A DNA stretch of 63,428 bases, filler included, from Octopus bimaculoides (Eukaryota), in assembly GCF_001194135.2 (NCBI RefSeq). It is 6 parts of 6 records of this genome, joined end to end, with 100 filler letters (N's around TTAATTAATTAA, not from the genome) between each part and the next. Parts side by side here need not be neighbours in the genome. Positions count along the whole stretch, not along the records: positions 52,500 to 60,331 come from NC_068987.1; 5 more parts are not named here. The stretch is one strand, 5' to 3'. How positions within the stretch are numbered: position 1 is the first letter of the stretch; the number at the start of each line of letters is the position of its first letter. Below the pieces are notes generated by a model. It was not told the origin of the DNA. It saw only the letters and a list, made by a program, of their open reading frames with translations, and did not search any database. Position numbers and translations under genes: made by a program. Below, piece after piece: positions 52,364-60,331 of the stretch.

Positions 52364-52610
52364 TCATCATTATTTATGGTCTATTTTCCATGCTAGCATN
52401 NNNNNNNNNNNNNNNNNNNNNNNNNNNNNNNNNNNNNNNNNNNTTAATTAATTAANNNNNNNNNNNNNNNNNNNNNNNNNNNNNNNNNNNNNNNNNNNNA
52501 TATATATATATATATATATATATATAATCATCATCATCATCATTTAGTGTCTGTTTTTCATGCTGGCATGGTTTTTACGGCAGGATGCCAACCACTTCAT
52601 AGAGTGTACT

Positions 52611-52745
52611 GGGTGTCTTTCACATGTCACCAGCATGGGTACCTTCAAGGTGTCACCAGCATGAGTGTCTTCAACGTGTCACTGGCACAGGTGACTCTTA
52701 CATGTCACTGGCATGGGTGTTTTCACGTATCACCAACACTGGCGA
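52611..52745. repeat. 26-bp degenerate minisatellite, about 5 units
   Basis: TGTCAC recurs at 52625, 52651, 52677 and 52703. Confidence 0.8.
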
Positions 52746-52788
52746 CAAATATGATTTTGTATAAGGAAATATATAACATATATACATG

Positions 52789-52819
<31 letters not shown>

Positions 52820-55019
52820 GGGGGCGAGAGAGAGACAGATAGACAGACAGACAGATAGAAACAGAAAAATATAAATATATGTCTATGTGTTTGGTAATGA
52901 AGTTAATTCATTGCAGATGTCCATTACCATATTAATTAAAATATACATATATTGTTTTTTTACAATTATTCATCCCAAAATCTCAGCCAAATCTAAGAGT
53001 CTTCACCCAATGCTTGCTCTAGAGGTTAATTAACAAAAATTATCAATAAAGAAAAGATGAATACATTGTAAAAAGCTAATAATTATACAATAAGATAAGT
53101 TACAAGAGTAAATAAACAGAAAAGAAAAATTAACAAAAGAATATATTACAAATCCTTGAAAAGATCTTTCTTCCTGATAATATAAGCCAATGATACAAGA
53201 GCTAACAGAATTATAAAGAAACATAAAAACAATTATTATCATATGGCGAATATCATTAATAACATGTAAAATGAACAAAAAAGTAATTAATTAAATTTTT
53301 AAAATTAATCATTTAATTAAACAAATGGTCAGCTTCAATCCTTGTGGTATATTGTTTTATTTGTTTTGGGTTTTGATATATAATATGTGTGTGTTTCTAC
53401 ACATATACATTGTCAGATTTGATCAATTTTAAAAGAAGTATACTAAATAGTTTTGAAGAAGGAAATATTTAAAATGAGGAATTTTTCATTTGAATTTGGC
53501 AGAGTTCAGTCAAAGAAATGGGCAGTAAGATGATGGAAAGGAAGAGAAGTTTTAAAAAGAACAAGAAAAGTTTAAGAAGTACCATTTTCTTCTGCAGCAG
53601 AATCATCTGGATTTTCTCTTCTTAAAGAAGAAGCAGCAGACATTGAAAATTTTGCATTATTTTCTTTTTAAATAAATTACATAGAGTGTTTTGTCATTGG
53701 CTATTTTTCTGGACAGTCTACAAGGGATGTGTTACTTCATTAGAAAATTAATTCACACCTCTCTTAACATTCTCTGATCTAGATTGAATCATTCTTCCAA
53801 TGTCTGTGAGCTCACGCCAGATATATTCTCTTGGTATATTCCCTTCTTCCTCAGCATTCAGTCATTGCAGCATCTTTCCAATAAAGTTCTTTCAGCTTCG
53901 CTGATGGACAGTTTCTCATATCCTTCTCAATCAAGTTATTTATATCCTCTTCAATTGCCTGAACAGAATTTCTTCAAATATAGGCTCTGCCTCAAGTATA
54001 ATATTTCAAAGACAATGCCATAGTGTTCATCAAGAAAAGTTCAATTAGAAAATCTCTTCTTGTCAAGTCATCAGAAGAAGTTACTTAAAGCTACTTAAGA
54101 ACAGGTTCAAGATGTTTTGTACACACTTTAAAAAAAAAATTGCTATTACTTGCTAATCTATGGGTTATAGCAGAAAAGTGGTATTAGGAGGCATGAAATG
54201 ATTTAATGAAATTATCTTCCCTTTAAAAGGAAATTAAATAATATTCTTGATATTAAAACACTGTAAACTTACATATTGTATTTCCCAAACCCTATACCTT
54301 GATTAACTAATCCTACCCAGAACTGCAATGCAACCCATTCTAATGTTTTAAAACCCTATAAATTATCACAATAACAAATTGTCAACTCTACTTTGACCCT
54401 GCAAAGTAAATGGTAGGTGAGGTGCCTCCTGGGATAGTGTGCAAGTCTATCACAGAGACTCTTTCATAGAGATTTTAGTAAACTTAACCATGTAGAATTG
54501 CCTTATAAATTTGTCCAATAACATTGTCATATAGAATTGTCTTATAGTATTGGCCATATGAAATCACTCAATAGAATTTTCCAATAAATTTGTCCTACAA
54601 AGCTGCAGTTAAAATTAATCTTTTGGCTCATCCCTATAGAATTGTCCTCCAAAAATGCCCTGTAGAATGCTTTATAATATTGCCCCAAAATATTATCCAT
54701 ACAGAATTACCCTATAGAATTTCTCCATAAGAGAACAACAATATATATTCGAATTTGAGCTGAACTCATTTCCAGTGATTTGGGAGTCAAACATCACAAC
54801 TATTAAACGCACTACCACTGTATATCACAGATGCACCAAATTTTAAATGTGTATACATTCAACAAACACATGAGCATACATTCAATATGTACTACATAAA
54901 GATCATTCAATATATATTACAAATGCATACCTTTAACATTTACTACATGAGCATACATTCAACATATACTTCATGGGAATTATTCAACACGTACTTAATG
55001 TTCATACATTCAACAAATA

Positions 55020-55247
55020 CTATTCTTTTACTTGTTTCAGTCATTTGACTGCAGCCACGCTGAAGCACTGCCTTGAAGGAGTTTAGTCAAAGAAATCAAT
55101 CCCAGGTCTTATTCTTTATAAGCCTAGTACTTATTCTATCAGTCTCTTTTGCCAAAGTGCTAAGTTACATGGACATAAACTCACCCGCATCGTTTGTCAA
55201 ATGATGGCAGGGGGACAAACACAGATACACACACATACACATATACA

Positions 55248-55344
<97 letters not shown>

Positions 55345-55629
55345 AAGAAAAGAAATGGAGCTAGAATTAACAATTAGAAGTTGATCATTGGTATTAAAAG
55401 GTCACAGTTTAATTAAACTATGACCTTTTAATACCAATGATCAACTTCCAATTGTTAATTGTTGCTCGATTTTTTTACTGATCTGAATATATTAAACCAC
55501 GGTTTACCATTATTTAAATTACCAACTACTGTTAACCTTATAGCAAGGCCTATACATAGTGAGGTAATACATCAGTAGTGCCTATGGATACATTTATCCC
55601 TTAGATGGTTGCATAACCTCTAACTCATA

Positions 55630-55665
<36 letters not shown>

Positions 55666-55990
55666 TCTTCTAGTCAGGTGTCGCACTTTGCAATGCTGTG
55701 GTCATCACGATGTCTTGCCATCTTCTCCTATCCTCTACCCCATGGACAGCTGAGAATAAAGACAATCCTGTGGCTGCAATGTCTTTCAGACAAGAAGTGG
55801 GTGGTCTACTGCATATATATATATATATATTACAGGTTTCTTTCACTTTCCATCAACCAAATCCACTCACAAAACTTTGGTCAGCCTGAGGCTATAATAG
55901 AAGACACTTGCCCAAGGTTCCGCACAGTGAGACTGAACCAGGAACCATATGGCTGGGAAGCAAGCTTCTTACCATGCAACCACACCTTCA
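55020..55990 (-). mobile_element. SINE family A split by an insertion of about 470 bp in its internal microsatellite
   Basis: Tail half at 55020-55230, head half at 55830-55990, same orientation, with (ATCT)n/(AT)n on both sides of the insert. Confidence 0.65.
55365..55460. repeat. Spacerless 96-bp palindrome (2 mismatched pairs), degenerate extension to about 55340-55485; probable MITE
   Basis: AATTAACAATTAGAAGTTGATCATTGGTATTAAAAGGTCACAGTTTAA is followed immediately by its near reverse complement. Confidence 0.9.
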
Positions 55991-56629
55991 CCTATATTTA
56001 CATACATTTAACATATACTACATGACCGTCCATAAATGCAATATAAATATCATTTGTACATATTCACAAACCCTTGTTGCATGAATATATGAACCAAACA
56101 TTGACATGAAGTTCTATGCACCAAATAATGCAGCTGTGCATATGCACCAGTCCTTAACATACATGCTTTACCCAATTATTAGAGCATGCAAATATGGTTT
56201 AAACATTGTATTTACTTGCATGGATGAACCAAACATGACATGCTCATGCATAGATTAATTTTTGCATGTGCACATATACTCCAAAGACTATGTGTGCATG
56301 CATGTATCAATGAACCTTGGTATATGTCTACATGTAGGAAACAGTAACACTGGTTCATATGCCTCAAACATTGACATGGATACATCTACACTGATCATTG
56401 CTACACAATTTGTCCTTTTTGAACTTCTTCACCATAATATAGCCCTCTAAACCCCTCCCTCCTATTTGTGTTCACTCACTACCTTCCTTCCCTCTAGCTC
56501 CCCTCCCCCTCCCCTTTCACCATCTTAAGAACTTTCTCATCCACTCACACTATACAATCCTTGCTTCCACTTCAATTTTATATACTTCCCTGTAACTTGA
56601 GCTTAACTCACACCCCAGCCCACTAACCA

Positions 56630-56955
56630 CTGGTCACATCTTCTGTCTTCTCTTTCCTCATCTCTCTTTCCTCTCTCTCTTCTCTCTGTCTCCTCTCTCT
56701 CTTCTCTCTGTCTCCTCTCTCTCTTCTCTCTGTCTCCTCTCTCTCTCTTCTCCCCTTCTCTCTCTCTCTTCTCCCCTTCTCTCTCTCTCTCTCTTCTCCC
56801 ATTTTTCTCTCTCTCTTCTCCCCTTCTATCTCTCTCTTCTCCCCTTCTCTCTCTCTCTTCTCCCCTTCTCTCTCACTCTCTCCTTTCTCTCTCTCTCTCT
56901 CTCCCCTTTCTTCTCTCTCACTCTCTCTCTCATTTCTCTTCTCTGTCTCTCTCTC
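56630..56955. repeat. Polypyrimidine (CT-rich) tract with TCTCTTCTCCCC-type subunits
   Basis: Seen directly; explains the RE-rich ORF at 56623-56997. Confidence 0.9.
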
Positions 56956-57131
56956 TGAAATATTGACTACATTATGTATTAATATAAAAATATGCATACA
57001 TAATTATGCACACACAGACACATATGCATTGAAATTGATGCACATAGACAGATGTGTAGGAAATGTCAGAGCAGATGTAAATACATATTGACATGCACAC
57101 ACACACACATGGTATTTTTGTATAAGCTTAA

Positions 57132-57467
57132 AGCTTATGGCGATCACTGCAATGACTAAGGAAAATAGTCTAATAAAGGGGCATATAAGCCCCCAAGCTT
57201 GAACATGGCATTATATAAAAAAAACCATTTGCACTGAAAGCATATAAAAAGTTTGTTTATTTAAAAGCAAATACGAACTAATATAGTTCTTAAATTTGAC
57301 AGAAAGAGGGAGGCTAATTCGCTGGTGTAAAGGTAACACACTTAGTTGCATTAACAAAGAGATGTGGATTCGTGTCCCACGCGAATAGGAAAGCCTTCTT
57401 TTCTCTGTTGAGGGTTTATATGCCCCTAAATTAGACTATTTTCCTTAGTCATTGCACAGTGATCGCT
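57132..57467. mobile_element. Foldback element 2: TTAA-flanked, AG...CT termini, tRNA-like apex, about 103-bp insertion in the left arm
   Basis: TTAA at 57128-57131 and 57468-57471; 26-bp perfect arm core GCAATGACTAAGGAAAATAGTCTAAT; inner arms 57300-57315 / 57392-57407 (12/16). Confidence 0.8.
57316..57388 (+). pseudogene. Degenerate tRNA-like cloverleaf (anticodon ambiguous, possibly GCA)
   Basis: Acceptor ATTCGC/GCGAAT, box A TGGTGTAAAGG, D stem GTGT/ACAC, anticodon stem CTTAG/CAAAG, T arm GTGGA-TTCGTGT-CCCAC, TTTT at 57399. Confidence 0.65.
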
Positions 57468-57552
57468 TTAAGCATATATAAAAATACCATTATTATTATT
57501 TACAGGATTGTAAAACACAGCACCGTATAAAAAAACCCCATTCAAACCGAAA

Positions 57553-57599
<47 letters not shown>

Positions 57600-58039
57600 T
57601 ATGCAATTCCAGCATAGAAGGTGTTTATCAGCCATTTCAAAATATACTAAAACCGTTAGATTCACTTCAACATTTAATTTGTCAAAATATTTTCGTCGCT
57701 TTGAAGCCGCGACCTGTTCACTGACAAAATTCTGTGCTGCATCTGAGAAAGTAACGGTTAGTTCACGATGTGTGTGTGTATGCACGTATGCATATGTGTA
57801 CATGTGTATGCATGCGTGCATGCTTATACAAATAATGTGCATATGCATGTTTATGAGTTTTTAGTTATGTAAGCTTGTTGACGTGTGTGTGTGTGTGGGT
57901 AGGTGGGTGGGTGTGTGTATGTACATGTGAGCATATGTTTATCTACTGATATGTTTGTCTGTTCAAGTTGTAAATATGACTGTTACTCTGTCGAAGGTTG
58001 TATATATATATATATAGAGAGAGAGAATGGGGGGGGGGA

Positions 58040-58200
58040 GAATTCACGGAAAAACAAAAGACGAAGACATGTAGTATAGACAACAAACAGATGTATTAGT
58101 TTAACGCTCAGGAAGTGAAAAAAGTCGTTAATGTTTCGAGCCTATGCTCTTCCACAGAAAGAAAAACAGAAAGAAACAAGGAGAGAAAATAAAGATATGT
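58040..58200 (-). mobile_element. Probable PLE terminal-repeat fragment with a variant hammerhead-like motif at 58125-58162
   Basis: Minus strand TCTTT-CTGTGGA-A-GAGC(atag)GCTC-GAAA-CAT-T-AACGA. Confidence 0.45.
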
Positions 58201-58204
58201 ATAT

Positions 58205-60331
58205 ATATATATGACGAAATAGAAGGAGATGTAGCTTCACACGATGTAGAAGACAACTGGAAATTTCTACGGGACAACCTGCTGAGGGCCACTGAGCAGA
58301 TCTGTGGATGGTGCAAAGTCCCCTCTCGACCCAAAATAACGTCGTGGTGGAACAATGTTGTTGATAGGGCTATTAGACAAAAAAAAAAAAAAAAGAAACA
58401 GGCTTGGAAGGACTGGAAGAACGGTGGTAGCAGGGAATTGTATCAGACTGCCAGAAGGGAAGCTAGGCGACAGGTTTACTTAGCCAGAGGGGAACCAGAT
58501 AAGAAAAAAATTGCCAAAATTCTACGCCATGAGGGCCAAAGATTTGAGGTATTTTGTGTTGCAAGACAGTGTATGAGACAGAATCGTGATGTCGTGGGAG
58601 AGAAATGTGTTCGCATGGATGATAGTACACTTGCACTAAACNNNNNNNNNNNNNNNNNNNNNNNNNNNNNNNNNNNNNNNNNNNNNNNNNNNNNNNNNNN
58701 NNNNNNNNNNNNNNNNNNNNNNNNNNNNNNNNNNNNNNNNNNNNNNNNNNNNNNNNNNNNNNNNNNNNNNNNNNNNNNNNNNNNNNNNNNNNNNNNNNNN
58801 NNNNNNNNNNNNNNNNNNNNNNNNNNNNNNNNNNNNNNNNNNNNNNNNNNNNNNNNNNNNNNNNNNNNNNNNNNNNNNNNNNNNNNNNNNNNNNNNNNNN
58901 NNNNNNNNNNNNNNNNNNNNNNNNNNNNNNNNNNNNNNNNNNNNNNNNNNNNNNNNNNNNNNNNNNNNNNNNNNNNNNNNNNNNNNNNNNNNNNNNNNNN
59001 NNNNNNNNNNNNNNNNNNNNNNNNNNNNNNNNNNNNNNNNNNNNNNNNNNNNNNNNNNNNNNNNNNNNNNNNNNNNNNNNNNNNNNNNNNNNNNNNNNNN
59101 NNNNNNNNNNNNNNNNNNNNNNNNNNNNNNNNNNNNNNNNNNNNNNNNNNNNNNNNNNNNNNNNNNNNNNNNNNNNNNNNNNNNNNNNNNNNNNNNNNNN
59201 NNNNNNNNNNNNNNNNNNNNNNNNNNNNNNNNNNNNNNNNNNNNNNNNNNNNNNNNNNNNNNNNNNNNNNNNNNNNNNNNNNNNNNNNNNNNNNNNNNNN
59301 NNNNNNNNNNNNNNNNNNNNNNNNNNNNNNNNNNNNNNNNNNNNNNNNNNNNNNNNNNNNNNNNNNNNNNNNNNNNNNNNNNNNNNNNNNNNNNNNNNNN
59401 NNNNNNNNNNNNNNNNNNNNNNNNNNNNNNNNNNNNNNNNNNNNNNNNNNNNNNNNNNNNNNNNNNNNNNNNNNNNNNNNNNNNNNNNNNNNNNNNNNNN
59501 NNNNNNNNNNNNNNNNNNNNNNNNNNNNNNNNNNNNNNNNNNNNNNNNNNNNNNNNNNNNNNNNNNNNGAACTAGAGGAGAAGTTTCAGGTGTGGAAGCA
59601 GAGACTAGAATCGAAGGGCCTTAGAGTCAACCTAGCTAAAACCAAAGTCCTAATAAGTAGGAAGGTAGACAAAACACAAACCCCTTCAGGTAGATGGCCC
59701 TGCTCGATCTGTAGAAAAGGCGTAGGTAGAAACTCTATAAGATGTACCCAGTGAAAGCTATGGATACATAAGAGGTGCAGCAATATCAAAGGAAGGTTAA
59801 CTAAGAAGTTAGTTTTTGTATGTGGCAGATGTTCAGGAGCAATAAACACTGAAAATGTGCAGAAAACAACTTTGGCCACATTCTAGGGAAAAAAACTAAA
59901 CTTAGTTGATAGCTTCCACTATCTAGGTGACCAAGTTAGTAGTGGGGGAGGGTGCGCTGAAAGTGTAGCTGCTAGAATATGAATAGCCTGGACACAGTTC
60001 AGAGAGCTCTTATCTCTGCTGGTGACAAGGGGCCTCTCACTCAGAGTAAAAGGCAGACTGTACGACGCATGTGTACGAACAGCCATGCTACATGGCAGTG
60101 AAACACGGGCCGTGACTGCTGAGGACATGCGTAGGCCCGCAAGGAATGAAGCCAGTATACTTCGATGGATGTGTAATGTCAGTGTGCATACTAGACAGAG
60201 TGTAAGTACCTTGAGAGAAAAGTTGAACCTAAGATGCATCAGTTGTGGTGTGCAAGAGAGACAATTGCGCTGGTATGGTCATGTGGCGAGAATGGATGAG
60301 GATAGCTGTGTGAAAAAGTGTCACACCCTAG
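58205..60331 (+). mobile_element. RTE-clade LINE, relatively young, with a PHD-like finger after the RT core; central RT lost in a gap; in-frame stops
   Basis: VEDNWKFLRDNLLRATEQICGW..WWNNVVDRAI..; LESKGLRVNLAKTKVL; CSICRKGVGRNSIRCTQ*KLWIHKRC..CGRC; FHYLGDQV; KGRLYDACVRTAMLHGSET; RQLRWYGHVARM. Confidence 0.92.

What the first reader, a model, noticed from the sequence alone, without database searches (positions are those of the whole stretch)
57128..57471. tRNA-like gene at the apex of a TTAA-flanked foldback (element 2)
Seen: TTAA|AG...CT|TTAA boundaries in a palindromic GCTTAAGC site, arms of about 80 bp once a 103-bp left-arm insertion is removed, and a cloverleaf with a perfect D arm, 4/5 T stem and 6-bp acceptor pairing at the axis. 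Established: a TTAA TSD with RR...YY termini is the Kolobok signature (piggyBac uses TTAA with CC..GG). Inference: a Kolobok-like non-autonomous element carrying a Pol III cassette.
Basis: partly seen in the sequence, partly recalled or inferred. Interest (0 to 1): 0.78.

Follow-up and report, generated by a model that had tools for sequence, protein, structure and literature searches.

The report
Octopus foldback repeat holding tRNA relic
This is a 382-base hairpin-forming repeat in an octopus genome with a decayed tRNA-like sequence inside it, most likely transposon debris; the TTAA "insertion scars" that pointed to the Kolobok transposon family lie inside the repeat arms and do not mark its ends.

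Summary
The piece is octopus DNA: its LINE remnants match Octopus vulgaris and O. bimaculoides proteins.

- **Foldback:** real, and far beyond chance. blastn finds an inverted repeat 57109-57196 vs 57490-57408 (E 1.5e-23). The DNA fold is -77 kcal/mol, z = -11.
- **tRNA-like sequence:** real but decayed. Rfam tRNA scores 32.8 bits (cut-off 29) at 57316-57388, but only when that stretch is scanned alone. ARAGORN finds it only at relaxed thresholds. The anticodon arm is irregular and three stem pairs are mismatched.
- **Boundaries:** The inverted repeat runs through both TTAAs and 19 nt beyond them, with 17/19 complementary. Across 390 TTAA sites in 48 kb of octopus DNA the maximum is 12/19. TTAA occurs 8 times per kb and, being a palindrome, is mirrored automatically in any inverted repeat.
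- **Apex:** the tRNA-like part sits at the axis only if 103 nt are removed. That block begins with another copy of the arm-end motif, and the motif links by a chain of similarities to the terminal repeats of a different octopus MITE, which is flanked by a direct repeat of 5-7 nt and not by TTAA.
- **Not found:** no second copy, no empty site and no Kolobok transposase could be reached.

Best reading: a MITE-like foldback of undetermined superfamily carrying a tRNA-derived relic. The Kolobok assignment is unproven. Interest is low to moderate.

The parts
57109..57196 (.). Left arm of the inverted repeat.
   Evidence: blastn self-match to 57490-57408, E 1.5e-23. Block alignment gives 22/24, 8/8 and 45/49 identities.
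57408..57490 (.). Right arm of the inverted repeat.
   Evidence: The outer motif GCATATATAAAAATACCAT (57472-57490) has its only other match within 3 mismatches at 57109-57127 on the minus strand; 0 matches expected by chance.
57128..57131 (.). It lies inside the arm.
   Evidence: Sequence. The inverted repeat continues 19 nt further out.
57468..57471 (.). Right TTAA. It lies inside the arm.
   Evidence: Sequence.
57133..57139 (.). 7-nt indel in the left arm just inside the TTAA (GCTTATG). It resembles a duplication of the preceding GCTTAAA.
   Evidence: Alignment of the arms.
57197..57299 (+). 103-nt block with no partner in the right half. Its first 50 nt (57197-57246, motif b) are a further copy of the arm-end motif, plus a terminal extension.
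   Evidence: No similarity to 57300-57407 on either strand. b vs d: 0/1000 shuffles reach the score; a vs b: 1/1000; b vs c: 5/1000.
57316..57388 (+). tRNA-derived sequence (pseudogene-like). ARAGORN reads the anticodon as CAT (57349-57351), but the anticodon arm is irregular.
   Evidence: Rfam RF00005 32.8 bits vs cut-off 29. ARAGORN finds it only at -ps95 and not at default.
57323..57333 (+). A-box-like segment TGGTGTAAAGG.
   Evidence: Read from the sequence against the Pol III type-2 consensus TRGCNNAGTGG (established knowledge). Not tested functionally.
57367..57377 (+). B-box-like segment GATTCGTGTCC.
   Evidence: Read from the sequence against the consensus GGTTCGANNCC. Not tested functionally.
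57399..57402 (+). TTTT run 11 nt after the tRNA-like 3' end, a possible Pol III terminator.
   Evidence: Sequence.
57503..57559 (+). Motif d: a MITE terminal-repeat-like sequence just right of the foldback, abutting (TA)n.
   Evidence: Matches both terminal repeats of the O. vulgaris MITE at L001:466-890 (82% over 33 nt, E 3e-4; 0/1000 shuffles). In 48 kb the motif occurs only at these sites.
57096..57109 (.). (CA)7 microsatellite abutting the left end of the inverted repeat. No target-site duplication is recognisable at 57109/57490.
   Evidence: Sequence.

Best explanation
**What it is.** A single, decayed, non-coding foldback element of the MITE type, 57109-57490 (382 bp), in an octopus genome.
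- It has two arms of 83-88 nt, about 92% alike apart from two small indels.
- The arms enclose 211 nt that include a tRNA-derived relic (57316-57388) with A- and B-box-like segments and a T-run.

**How it would work (inferred).**
- Such an element would be moved in trans by a transposase that binds its terminal repeats.
- The superfamily cannot be determined from this copy. TTAA is internal to the arms, and no target-site duplication is visible at the true ends of the repeat.
- The tRNA-like part would be a tRNA (pseudo)gene or SINE-head fragment picked up in the element's interior. A precedent is the human MITE MER6, which carries a SINE-derived V domain.
- It is too degenerate to be a working tRNA. 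At most it could still bind TFIIIC/Pol III.

**Shown:** the inverted repeat and its extent, the tRNA-model match, the absence of coding capacity, and the relation of the end motif to another octopus MITE's terminal repeat.

**Inferred:** mobility, capture of the tRNA-like part, and any Pol III activity.
For: - **Repeat and fold:** inverted repeat 57109-57196 vs 57490-57408, E 1.5e-23. The fold has z = -11.
- **TTAA is internal:** identity is continuous across the TTAAs, 17/19 outside them, against a maximum of 12/19 at 390 TTAA sites in 48 kb of octopus DNA.
- **tRNA-like part:** Rfam tRNA 32.8 bits, above the 29-bit cut-off. Three other octopus foldbacks scanned the same way as controls gave no tRNA hit.
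- **No coding capacity:** no ORF of 50 aa or more lies within the element.
- **Foldbacks are common here:** long-armed foldbacks of 150-480 bp occur about once per 10 kb in octopus DNA, at L001:13523-13885, L001:14009-14338, L001:466-890, L003:15896-16377 and window 55340-55485.
- **End motif recurs:** the arm-end motif appears again at 57197-57246 and 57503-57559. The latter matches the terminal repeats of the MITE at L001:466-890, whose ends are flanked by a direct CAAAAAT.
- **Precedent:** MER6 is a MITE carrying SINE-derived sequence (PMC6887750).
Against: - Only one copy is known. None was found in 41 kb of O. vulgaris DNA, in IMG/VR, in JGI metagenomes or in prokaryote genomes (one chance 20-mer).
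- No target-site duplication is visible at 57109/57490. The flanks are (CA)n on the left and (TTA)n on the right.
- The internal copy of the end motif (b) carries a terminal extension that the actual ends (a, c) lack. That is awkward for a simple one-element model.
- The similarity of a and c to b and d rests on short A/T-rich stretches (p about 0.001-0.005 by mononucleotide shuffles).
Confidence: 0.42

Rival explanations
1. Two copies of one small MITE family sit head to head around a tRNA pseudogene that is ordinary host DNA. The unit is end motif, 60-nt core, end motif, about 140 bp. One copy is complete at 57109-57246 (+). The other, at 57408-57490 (-), is truncated on its inner side.
For: - The left arm core is flanked on both sides by the end motif in inverted orientation: a at 57109-57135 and b at 57197-57246 (a vs b 1/1000 shuffles).
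- This explains why the "103-nt insertion" starts exactly at the end of the arm.
- b carries the terminal extension shared with d and with the terminal repeats of the L001 MITE.
- The tRNA-like part has gene-like surroundings, with an AT-rich 5' flank and TTTT 11 nt downstream.
Against: - The right copy lacks its second end; there is no similarity between 57300-57407 and 57197-57299.
- Two copies of one family within 160 bp is improbable unless the family is very abundant, yet no copy was seen in 41 kb of octopus DNA.
- The left end (a) lacks the terminal extension.
Confidence: 0.2
2. One reading: a Kolobok-type non-autonomous element, 57132-57467, with a TTAA target-site duplication and AG..CT termini. 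It would have inserted into the central TTAA of a pre-existing 42-nt palindrome.
For: - TTAA lies on both sides with AG...CT termini.
- The terminal AGCGAT equals the first 6 nt of the Xenopus XKol-A1 terminal repeat, which is flanked by TTAA (PMC6004289).
- Kolobok T2-MITEs are defined by a TTAA target and an AGGRR/RR terminus (same paper).
Against: - The putative target would be 17/19 self-complementary on each side. No such site exists among 390 TTAA sites (maximum 12/19).
- There is no drop in arm identity at the supposed boundary.
- TTAA occurs 8.1 times per kb and is mirrored automatically in an inverted repeat.
- A 7-nt indel sits 3 nt inside the left "terminus".
- A 6-nt match among about 10 listed terminal-repeat types is weak.
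- The other foldback in this piece (55340-55485) also has mirrored TTAAs well inside its arms.
- No transposase or second copy was found.
Confidence: 0.12
3. It is not a mobile element. A local inverted duplication (palindrome) arose around a tRNA pseudogene, for example by fold-back repair or replication template switching, and later decayed.
For: - It is a single copy as far as could be searched.
- There is no target-site duplication.
- Microsatellites lie at both ends.
Against: - The arm-end motif recurs at b and d and resembles a bona fide MITE terminal repeat.
- MITE-like foldbacks are common in this genome.
- The search space for other copies was tiny: 41 kb of a genome of roughly 2.7 Gb (genome size from general knowledge, not from a tool result).
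Confidence: 0.13
4. A tRNA-derived SINE inserted into the middle of an older foldback element.
For: Octopus genomes are rich in tRNA-derived SINEs (Ohshima & Okada 1994, cited in PMC10886601; about 4% of the O. bimaculoides genome, PMC12988792).
Against: - Only about 75 nt of tRNA-like sequence is present.
- There is no SINE body, no LINE-derived or A-rich tail, and no flanking duplication.
- The right arm starts 19 nt after the tRNA-like end.
Confidence: 0.05

Closest known systems
Kolobok T2-MITEs of Xenopus (Xmix, XKol families); zebrafish Angel is a further example recalled from memory
   Same: Short, non-coding and hairpin-forming. TTAA lies next to an AG... terminus here too, and AGCGAT is shared with the XKol-A1 terminal repeat (PMC6004289).
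   Different: Here the inverted repeat continues 19 nt beyond the TTAA. No duplication or empty site is shown, no transposase partner is known, and no tRNA-like insert is described for T2-MITEs in the paper read.
MER6/MER6A, a Tc1/mariner MITE carrying a V-SINE domain (PMC6887750)
   Same: A MITE whose interior holds a piece of a Pol III-type retroposon, showing that DNA transposons can pick up and spread such modules.
   Different: MER6 carries the SINE's conserved central domain, not a tRNA-like head. It is a proven multi-copy family with TA duplications.
Octopus MITE at O. vulgaris OX597824.1 (L001:466-890)
   Same: Its 32-nt terminal repeats (97% complementary) match motif d next to the foldback, and, through d, motif b inside it.
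   Different: The interior is unrelated and includes (TTAGGG)3. It has no tRNA-like part. Its ends are flanked by a 5-7 nt direct repeat (CAAAAAT), not by TTAA.
tRNA-derived SINEs of octopus (OK, OR1, OR2)
   Same: A tRNA-related sequence with A- and B-box-like segments.
   Different: No SINE body or tail and no flanking duplication. Here the sequence is flanked by inverted arms instead.
Foldback (FB) elements of Drosophila (from general knowledge)
   Same: Long inverted arms with a short unique centre.
   Different: FB arms are kilobase-scale arrays of subrepeats, whereas these arms are about 85 nt of unique sequence.

Membership tests
Kolobok superfamily (non-autonomous member) | TTAA target-site duplication, i.e. 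similarity between the ends stops at the TTAA and the flanks are unrelated. | tested here: not met
   The inverted repeat continues 19 nt beyond both TTAAs (17/19), against a maximum of 12/19 at 390 TTAA sites. A palindromic target cannot be excluded without an empty site.
Kolobok superfamily (non-autonomous member) | Termini 5'-RR...YY-3' (AG in Xenopus families). | tested here: met
   TTAA|AGC...GCT|TTAA. AGCGAT is shared with the XKol-A1 terminal repeat (PMC6004289). Specificity is low.
Kolobok superfamily (non-autonomous member) | An autonomous partner in the same genome with the same ends, encoding a Kolobok DDE transposase (with or without THAP). | not testable with these tools
   No tool searches eukaryote genome DNA. 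The three protein searches went on identifying the host and on trying to find copies.
MITE (generic) | Terminal inverted repeats, small size and no coding capacity. | tested here: met
   Arms of 83-88 nt in 382 bp, with no ORF of 50 aa or more inside.
MITE (generic) | Target-site duplication at the ends. | tested here: not met
   The flanks at 57109/57490 are (CA)n and TATTATT. No direct repeat is seen beyond an ambiguous AT.
MITE (generic) | Multiple dispersed copies. | tested here: inconclusive
   No copy in 41 kb of O. vulgaris DNA or in the viral, metagenome and prokaryote collections. The octopus genome itself could not be searched.
tRNA (Rfam RF00005) | Covariance-model score at or above the gathering score. 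| tested here: met
   32.8 bits vs 29 when scanned alone. The hit was lost to filters in the 7.8-kb scan.
tRNA (functional gene) | Canonical cloverleaf: 7-nt anticodon loop with U33 and a purine at 37, G53-C61, intact stems, and detection by standard finders. | tested here: not met
   ARAGORN at default finds nothing. Its relaxed parse has G33/T37 and an extra nucleotide before the anticodon stem, while the Rfam parse has a 9-nt loop. Mismatches are A.A at 1:72, A.A in the anticodon stem and A53.C61. The minimum-energy fold is not a cloverleaf.
tRNA-derived SINE | tRNA-related head, then a body, then a LINE-derived or A-rich tail, flanked by duplications. | tested here: not met
   Only the head-like 73-75 nt is present, and the right arm begins 19 nt downstream.
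piggyBac | TTAA duplication with CCY...RGG termini. | tested here: not met
   The termini next to the TTAA are AGC...GCT.

The most novel reading that the evidence does not exclude
Octopus genomes might hold a family of cut-and-paste foldback elements that carry a Pol III-competent tRNA-like module at the tip of a ~90-bp hairpin. Read-through transcripts would then be tRNA-capped hairpins. RNase P and RNase Z could cut these to release a long duplex as a small-RNA precursor, or the copies could act as mobile TFIIIC-binding/insulator sites. None of this was tested. It requires first that other copies with the same architecture exist.
Probability: 0.05. Interest if true: 0.6.

Novelty: new member of a known kind. 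Interest (0 to 1): 0.27.

Why it matters
If the same arms-plus-tRNA-like architecture recurs across the octopus genome, it would be a DNA transposon spreading a Pol III promoter module. My literature searches found a precedent only for SINE central domains (MER6). Such a family could seed Pol III/TFIIIC sites or hairpin RNAs in a genome noted for transposon-rich neural transcription.

As it stands it is one decayed copy. Its main value is cautionary: a palindromic tetramer such as TTAA inside an inverted repeat mimics a target-site duplication.

Tried and rejected
**Searches for other copies**
1. A 24-mer from the arms in IMG/VR gave 0 hits.
2. A 22-mer and a gapped terminal pattern in JGI metagenomes both gave 0 hits.
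3. A 20-mer in prokaryote genomes gave one hit in Lactiplantibacillus. It matches over only those 20 nt; by my estimate from the collection size, about one chance hit was expected.
4. Six-frame pseudo-proteins of the element searched against 5.8 billion proteins, hoping for ORFs called on octopus contigs, gave nothing at E <= 10.
5. An exact look-up of ten window ORFs, including one whose stop codon lies in the right TTAA and would be unchanged in an empty allele, found none in the collection.
6. Two O. vulgaris loci were fetched through LINE proteins (L001, L003; 41 kb). Neither holds a copy of the element or of the joined-flank "empty site".
7. O. bimaculoides proteins are not on record, so no loci could be fetched.

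**Other tests that led nowhere**
- Three other octopus foldbacks were scanned for tRNA-like centres; none has one.
- The 103-nt block has no counterpart in the right half.
- The SINE-insertion, piggyBac and functional-tRNA readings were rejected on anatomy.
- The Rfam hits to miRNA families in the piece all score far below their gathering cut-offs and fall on simple repeats or generic hairpins.

Full report
**Source of the DNA**

The piece (52500-60331, with an N gap at 58642-59568) is AT-rich (32% G+C counting the 927 N, about 36% without them) and full of microsatellites. Its 3' part holds remnants of a LINE.
- These remnants match "hypothetical" and reverse-transcriptase proteins of Octopus vulgaris and O. 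bimaculoides.
- Two O. vulgaris loci fetched through those proteins share the LINE at 88-91% identity but are different places (L001, L003).
- The host is therefore an octopus, and the finding must be read as eukaryotic repeat biology.

**Check of the observation**

The foldback is real.
- The repeat finder gives 57148-57196 vs 57408-57456 at 92%.
- blastn of the region against itself gives 57109-57196 vs 57490-57408, E 1.5e-23.
- As single-stranded DNA, 57124-57475 folds at -77.2 kcal/mol against -31.7 +/- 4.1 for shuffles.
- TTAA is indeed present at 57128-57131 and 57468-57471, next to AGC/GCT.

The tRNA-like sequence is also real, but weak.
- ARAGORN at default finds nothing, and the Rfam scan of the whole piece missed it.
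- When 57295-57405 is scanned alone, the Rfam tRNA model scores 32.8 bits against a gathering score of 29, at 57316-57388.
- ARAGORN at 95% thresholds draws a 75-nt tRNA-Met(CAT).
- The two programs parse the anticodon arm differently: a 9-nt loop in one, an extra base plus G33/T37 in the other.
- Three stem pairs are mismatched, and the RNA does not fold into a cloverleaf on its own (z = -1.4).
- It is a tRNA-derived relic, not a working tRNA gene.
- A-box-like (57323-57333) and B-box-like (57367-57377) segments and a TTTT run (57399-57402) can be read from the sequence. Their function is untested.
- Three other octopus foldbacks scanned in the same lax way as controls gave no tRNA hit.

An alignment of the left half with the reverse complement of the right half shows that the inverted repeat does not stop at the TTAAs.
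- The 19 nt outside them, ATGGTATTTTTGTATAAGC and GCATATATAAAAATACCAT, are 17/19 complementary.
- The 19-mer has no other match within 3 mismatches, with 0 expected by chance.
- At all 390 TTAA sites in the 48 kb of octopus DNA in hand, the best flank complementarity is 12/19 and the typical value is 5-6.
- Identity is about the same outside the TTAA (89%) as inside (about 92%). The only irregularities are a 7-nt indel just inside the left TTAA and a 2-nt indel.
- TTAA occurs 8.1 times per kb here, so about 0.7 per arm is expected.
- Because TTAA is its own reverse complement, it necessarily appears at the mirror position in the other arm.
- The paired TTAAs therefore carry no independent weight as a target-site duplication.
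- The second foldback of the piece (55340-55485, arms about 75 nt, about 90% alike) shows the same trap: mirrored TTAAs about 26 nt inside its arms.

**The "apex" and the 103-nt block**

- The solid arms end at 57196 and 57408. The 211 nt between them hold the 103-nt block (57197-57299), a weakly complementary pair of about 14-18 nt (21/1000 shuffles do as well), and the tRNA-like part.
- The tRNA-like part is at the axis only after the 103 nt are removed.
- That block has no counterpart in the right half.
- It begins with a further copy (b, 57197-57246) of the arm-end motif GCWT(T)ATATAAAAA..ACCAT.
- A fourth copy (d, 57503-57559) lies just right of the foldback.
- b and d share an extra terminal stretch, (T)TGCACTGAAAG / TTCAAACCGAAAG (0/1000 shuffles).
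- d matches both 32-nt terminal repeats of a 425-bp MITE in O. vulgaris, L001:466-890 (82% over 33 nt, E 3e-4; 0/1000).
- The terminal-repeat motif taken from d, searched with mismatches, matches only d, b and the two L001 terminal repeats in 48 kb.
- The ends of that MITE are flanked by a direct CAAAAAT (5-7 nt), not by TTAA.
- The similarity of the actual arm ends (a, c) to b is weaker (1/1000 and 5/1000) and rests on A/T-rich sequence, so I treat it as probable and not proven.

**What it most likely is**

Long-armed foldbacks of 150-480 bp occur about once per 10 kb in the octopus DNA examined, so this is the common local form of non-autonomous DNA element.
- **Best explanation (about 0.4):** one decayed MITE-like foldback, 57109-57490, of undetermined superfamily. 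Its interior holds a tRNA-derived fragment.
- The precedent is MER6, a MITE that acquired and spread a SINE domain (PMC6887750).
- Mobility, capture and any Pol III or TFIIIC binding are inferences.

Rivals:
- **Two inverted copies (about 0.2).** Two copies of a small MITE (end motif, 60-nt core, end motif) flank a tRNA pseudogene that is host DNA. This neatly explains motif b but needs a truncated right copy.
- **A non-mobile local palindrome (about 0.13).**
It needs an extraordinary 42-nt palindromic target.
- **A SINE insertion (about 0.05).** There is no body, tail or duplication.

**Comparison with known families**

Kolobok T2-MITEs are defined by a TTAA target and an AGGRR/RR terminus. 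Xenopus XKol-A1 has the terminal repeat AGCGATTCTGACATGG (PMC6004289), and the element here reads TTAA|AGCGATCACTG.
- That 6-nt identity is the only positive lead for Kolobok, and it is weak.
- The defining feature, a duplication beyond which the flanks are unrelated, is not met in this copy.
- The transposase partner could not be sought.
- The element is not a piggyBac (wrong termini), not a SINE and not a functional tRNA gene.
- My literature searches found no description of a MITE with a tRNA-like centre. That absence is not proof of novelty.

**Limits**

None of the tools searches eukaryotic genome DNA.
- All attempts to reach further copies failed: viral contigs, metagenomes, prokaryote genomes, a pseudo-protein search, exact ORF look-ups and two fetched octopus loci.
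- With 41 kb sampled from a genome of roughly 2.7 Gb (genome size from general knowledge, not from a tool result), this says only that the family, if it exists, is not extremely abundant.
- The decisive test is a BLASTN of the element against octopus assemblies, with inspection of where the copies end.

**Verdict**

- The Kolobok/TTAA interpretation is not supported by this copy, but the broader idea of a non-autonomous foldback element with a tRNA-derived insert stands as the best reading.
- It is ordinary transposon debris with one unusual passenger. Interest is low to moderate.

Noticed in passing
window 55340-55485: A second foldback: a 146-bp near-perfect palindrome (arms 73-78 nt, about 90% alike, no spacer), with mirrored TTAAs about 26 nt inside the arms. 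Like the studied element, it is immediately preceded by a (CA)n microsatellite. Its sequence is unrelated to the studied arms.
   Followed up: partly
window 58144-58641 and 59569-60331 (+), split by the N gap 58642-59568: Remnants of a LINE (the region around the reverse transcriptase, plus a C-terminal Cys-rich part). They are 60-95% identical to O. bimaculoides and O. vulgaris RT or PHD-finger "proteins". The fragments themselves give no Pfam hit, but the relative P0015 has RVT_1 and a weak PHD.
   Followed up: partly
L001:466-890 (O. vulgaris OX597824.1): A 425-bp MITE with 32-nt terminal repeats (97% complementary), flanked by a direct CAAAAAT. Its interior holds three telomere-like TTAGGG units followed by a G-run. 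Its terminal repeat is the relative of motifs b and d in the window.
   Followed up: partly
window 55024-55192 vs L003:1362-1522: A 170-nt interspersed repeat shared at 81% identity (E 3e-31) between the piece and an unrelated O. vulgaris locus. Its family was not identified.
   Followed up: no
window 57295-57405 vs the whole piece: The Rfam tRNA hit (32.8 bits, above the gathering score) is reported only when the short stretch is scanned alone. The scan of the 7.8-kb piece at E <= 10 did not list it, so speed filters can hide weak tRNA-like sequences in AT-rich DNA.
   Followed up: yes
window 52612-52725, 54493-54730, 54868-55021: Short tandem arrays: 26-nt units x4, 13-nt periodic units, and a 77-nt unit x2 at 73%. 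They lie among dense microsatellites: (ATCT)n 55249-55310, a CT-rich tract 56650-56960, and (TA)n 57560-57593.
   Followed up: no
L001:13523-13885, L001:14009-14338, L003:15896-16377: Three more long-armed foldbacks (arms 45-89 nt) in 41 kb of O. vulgaris DNA. None has a tRNA-like centre. They show that such structures are common in octopus genomes.
   Followed up: partly
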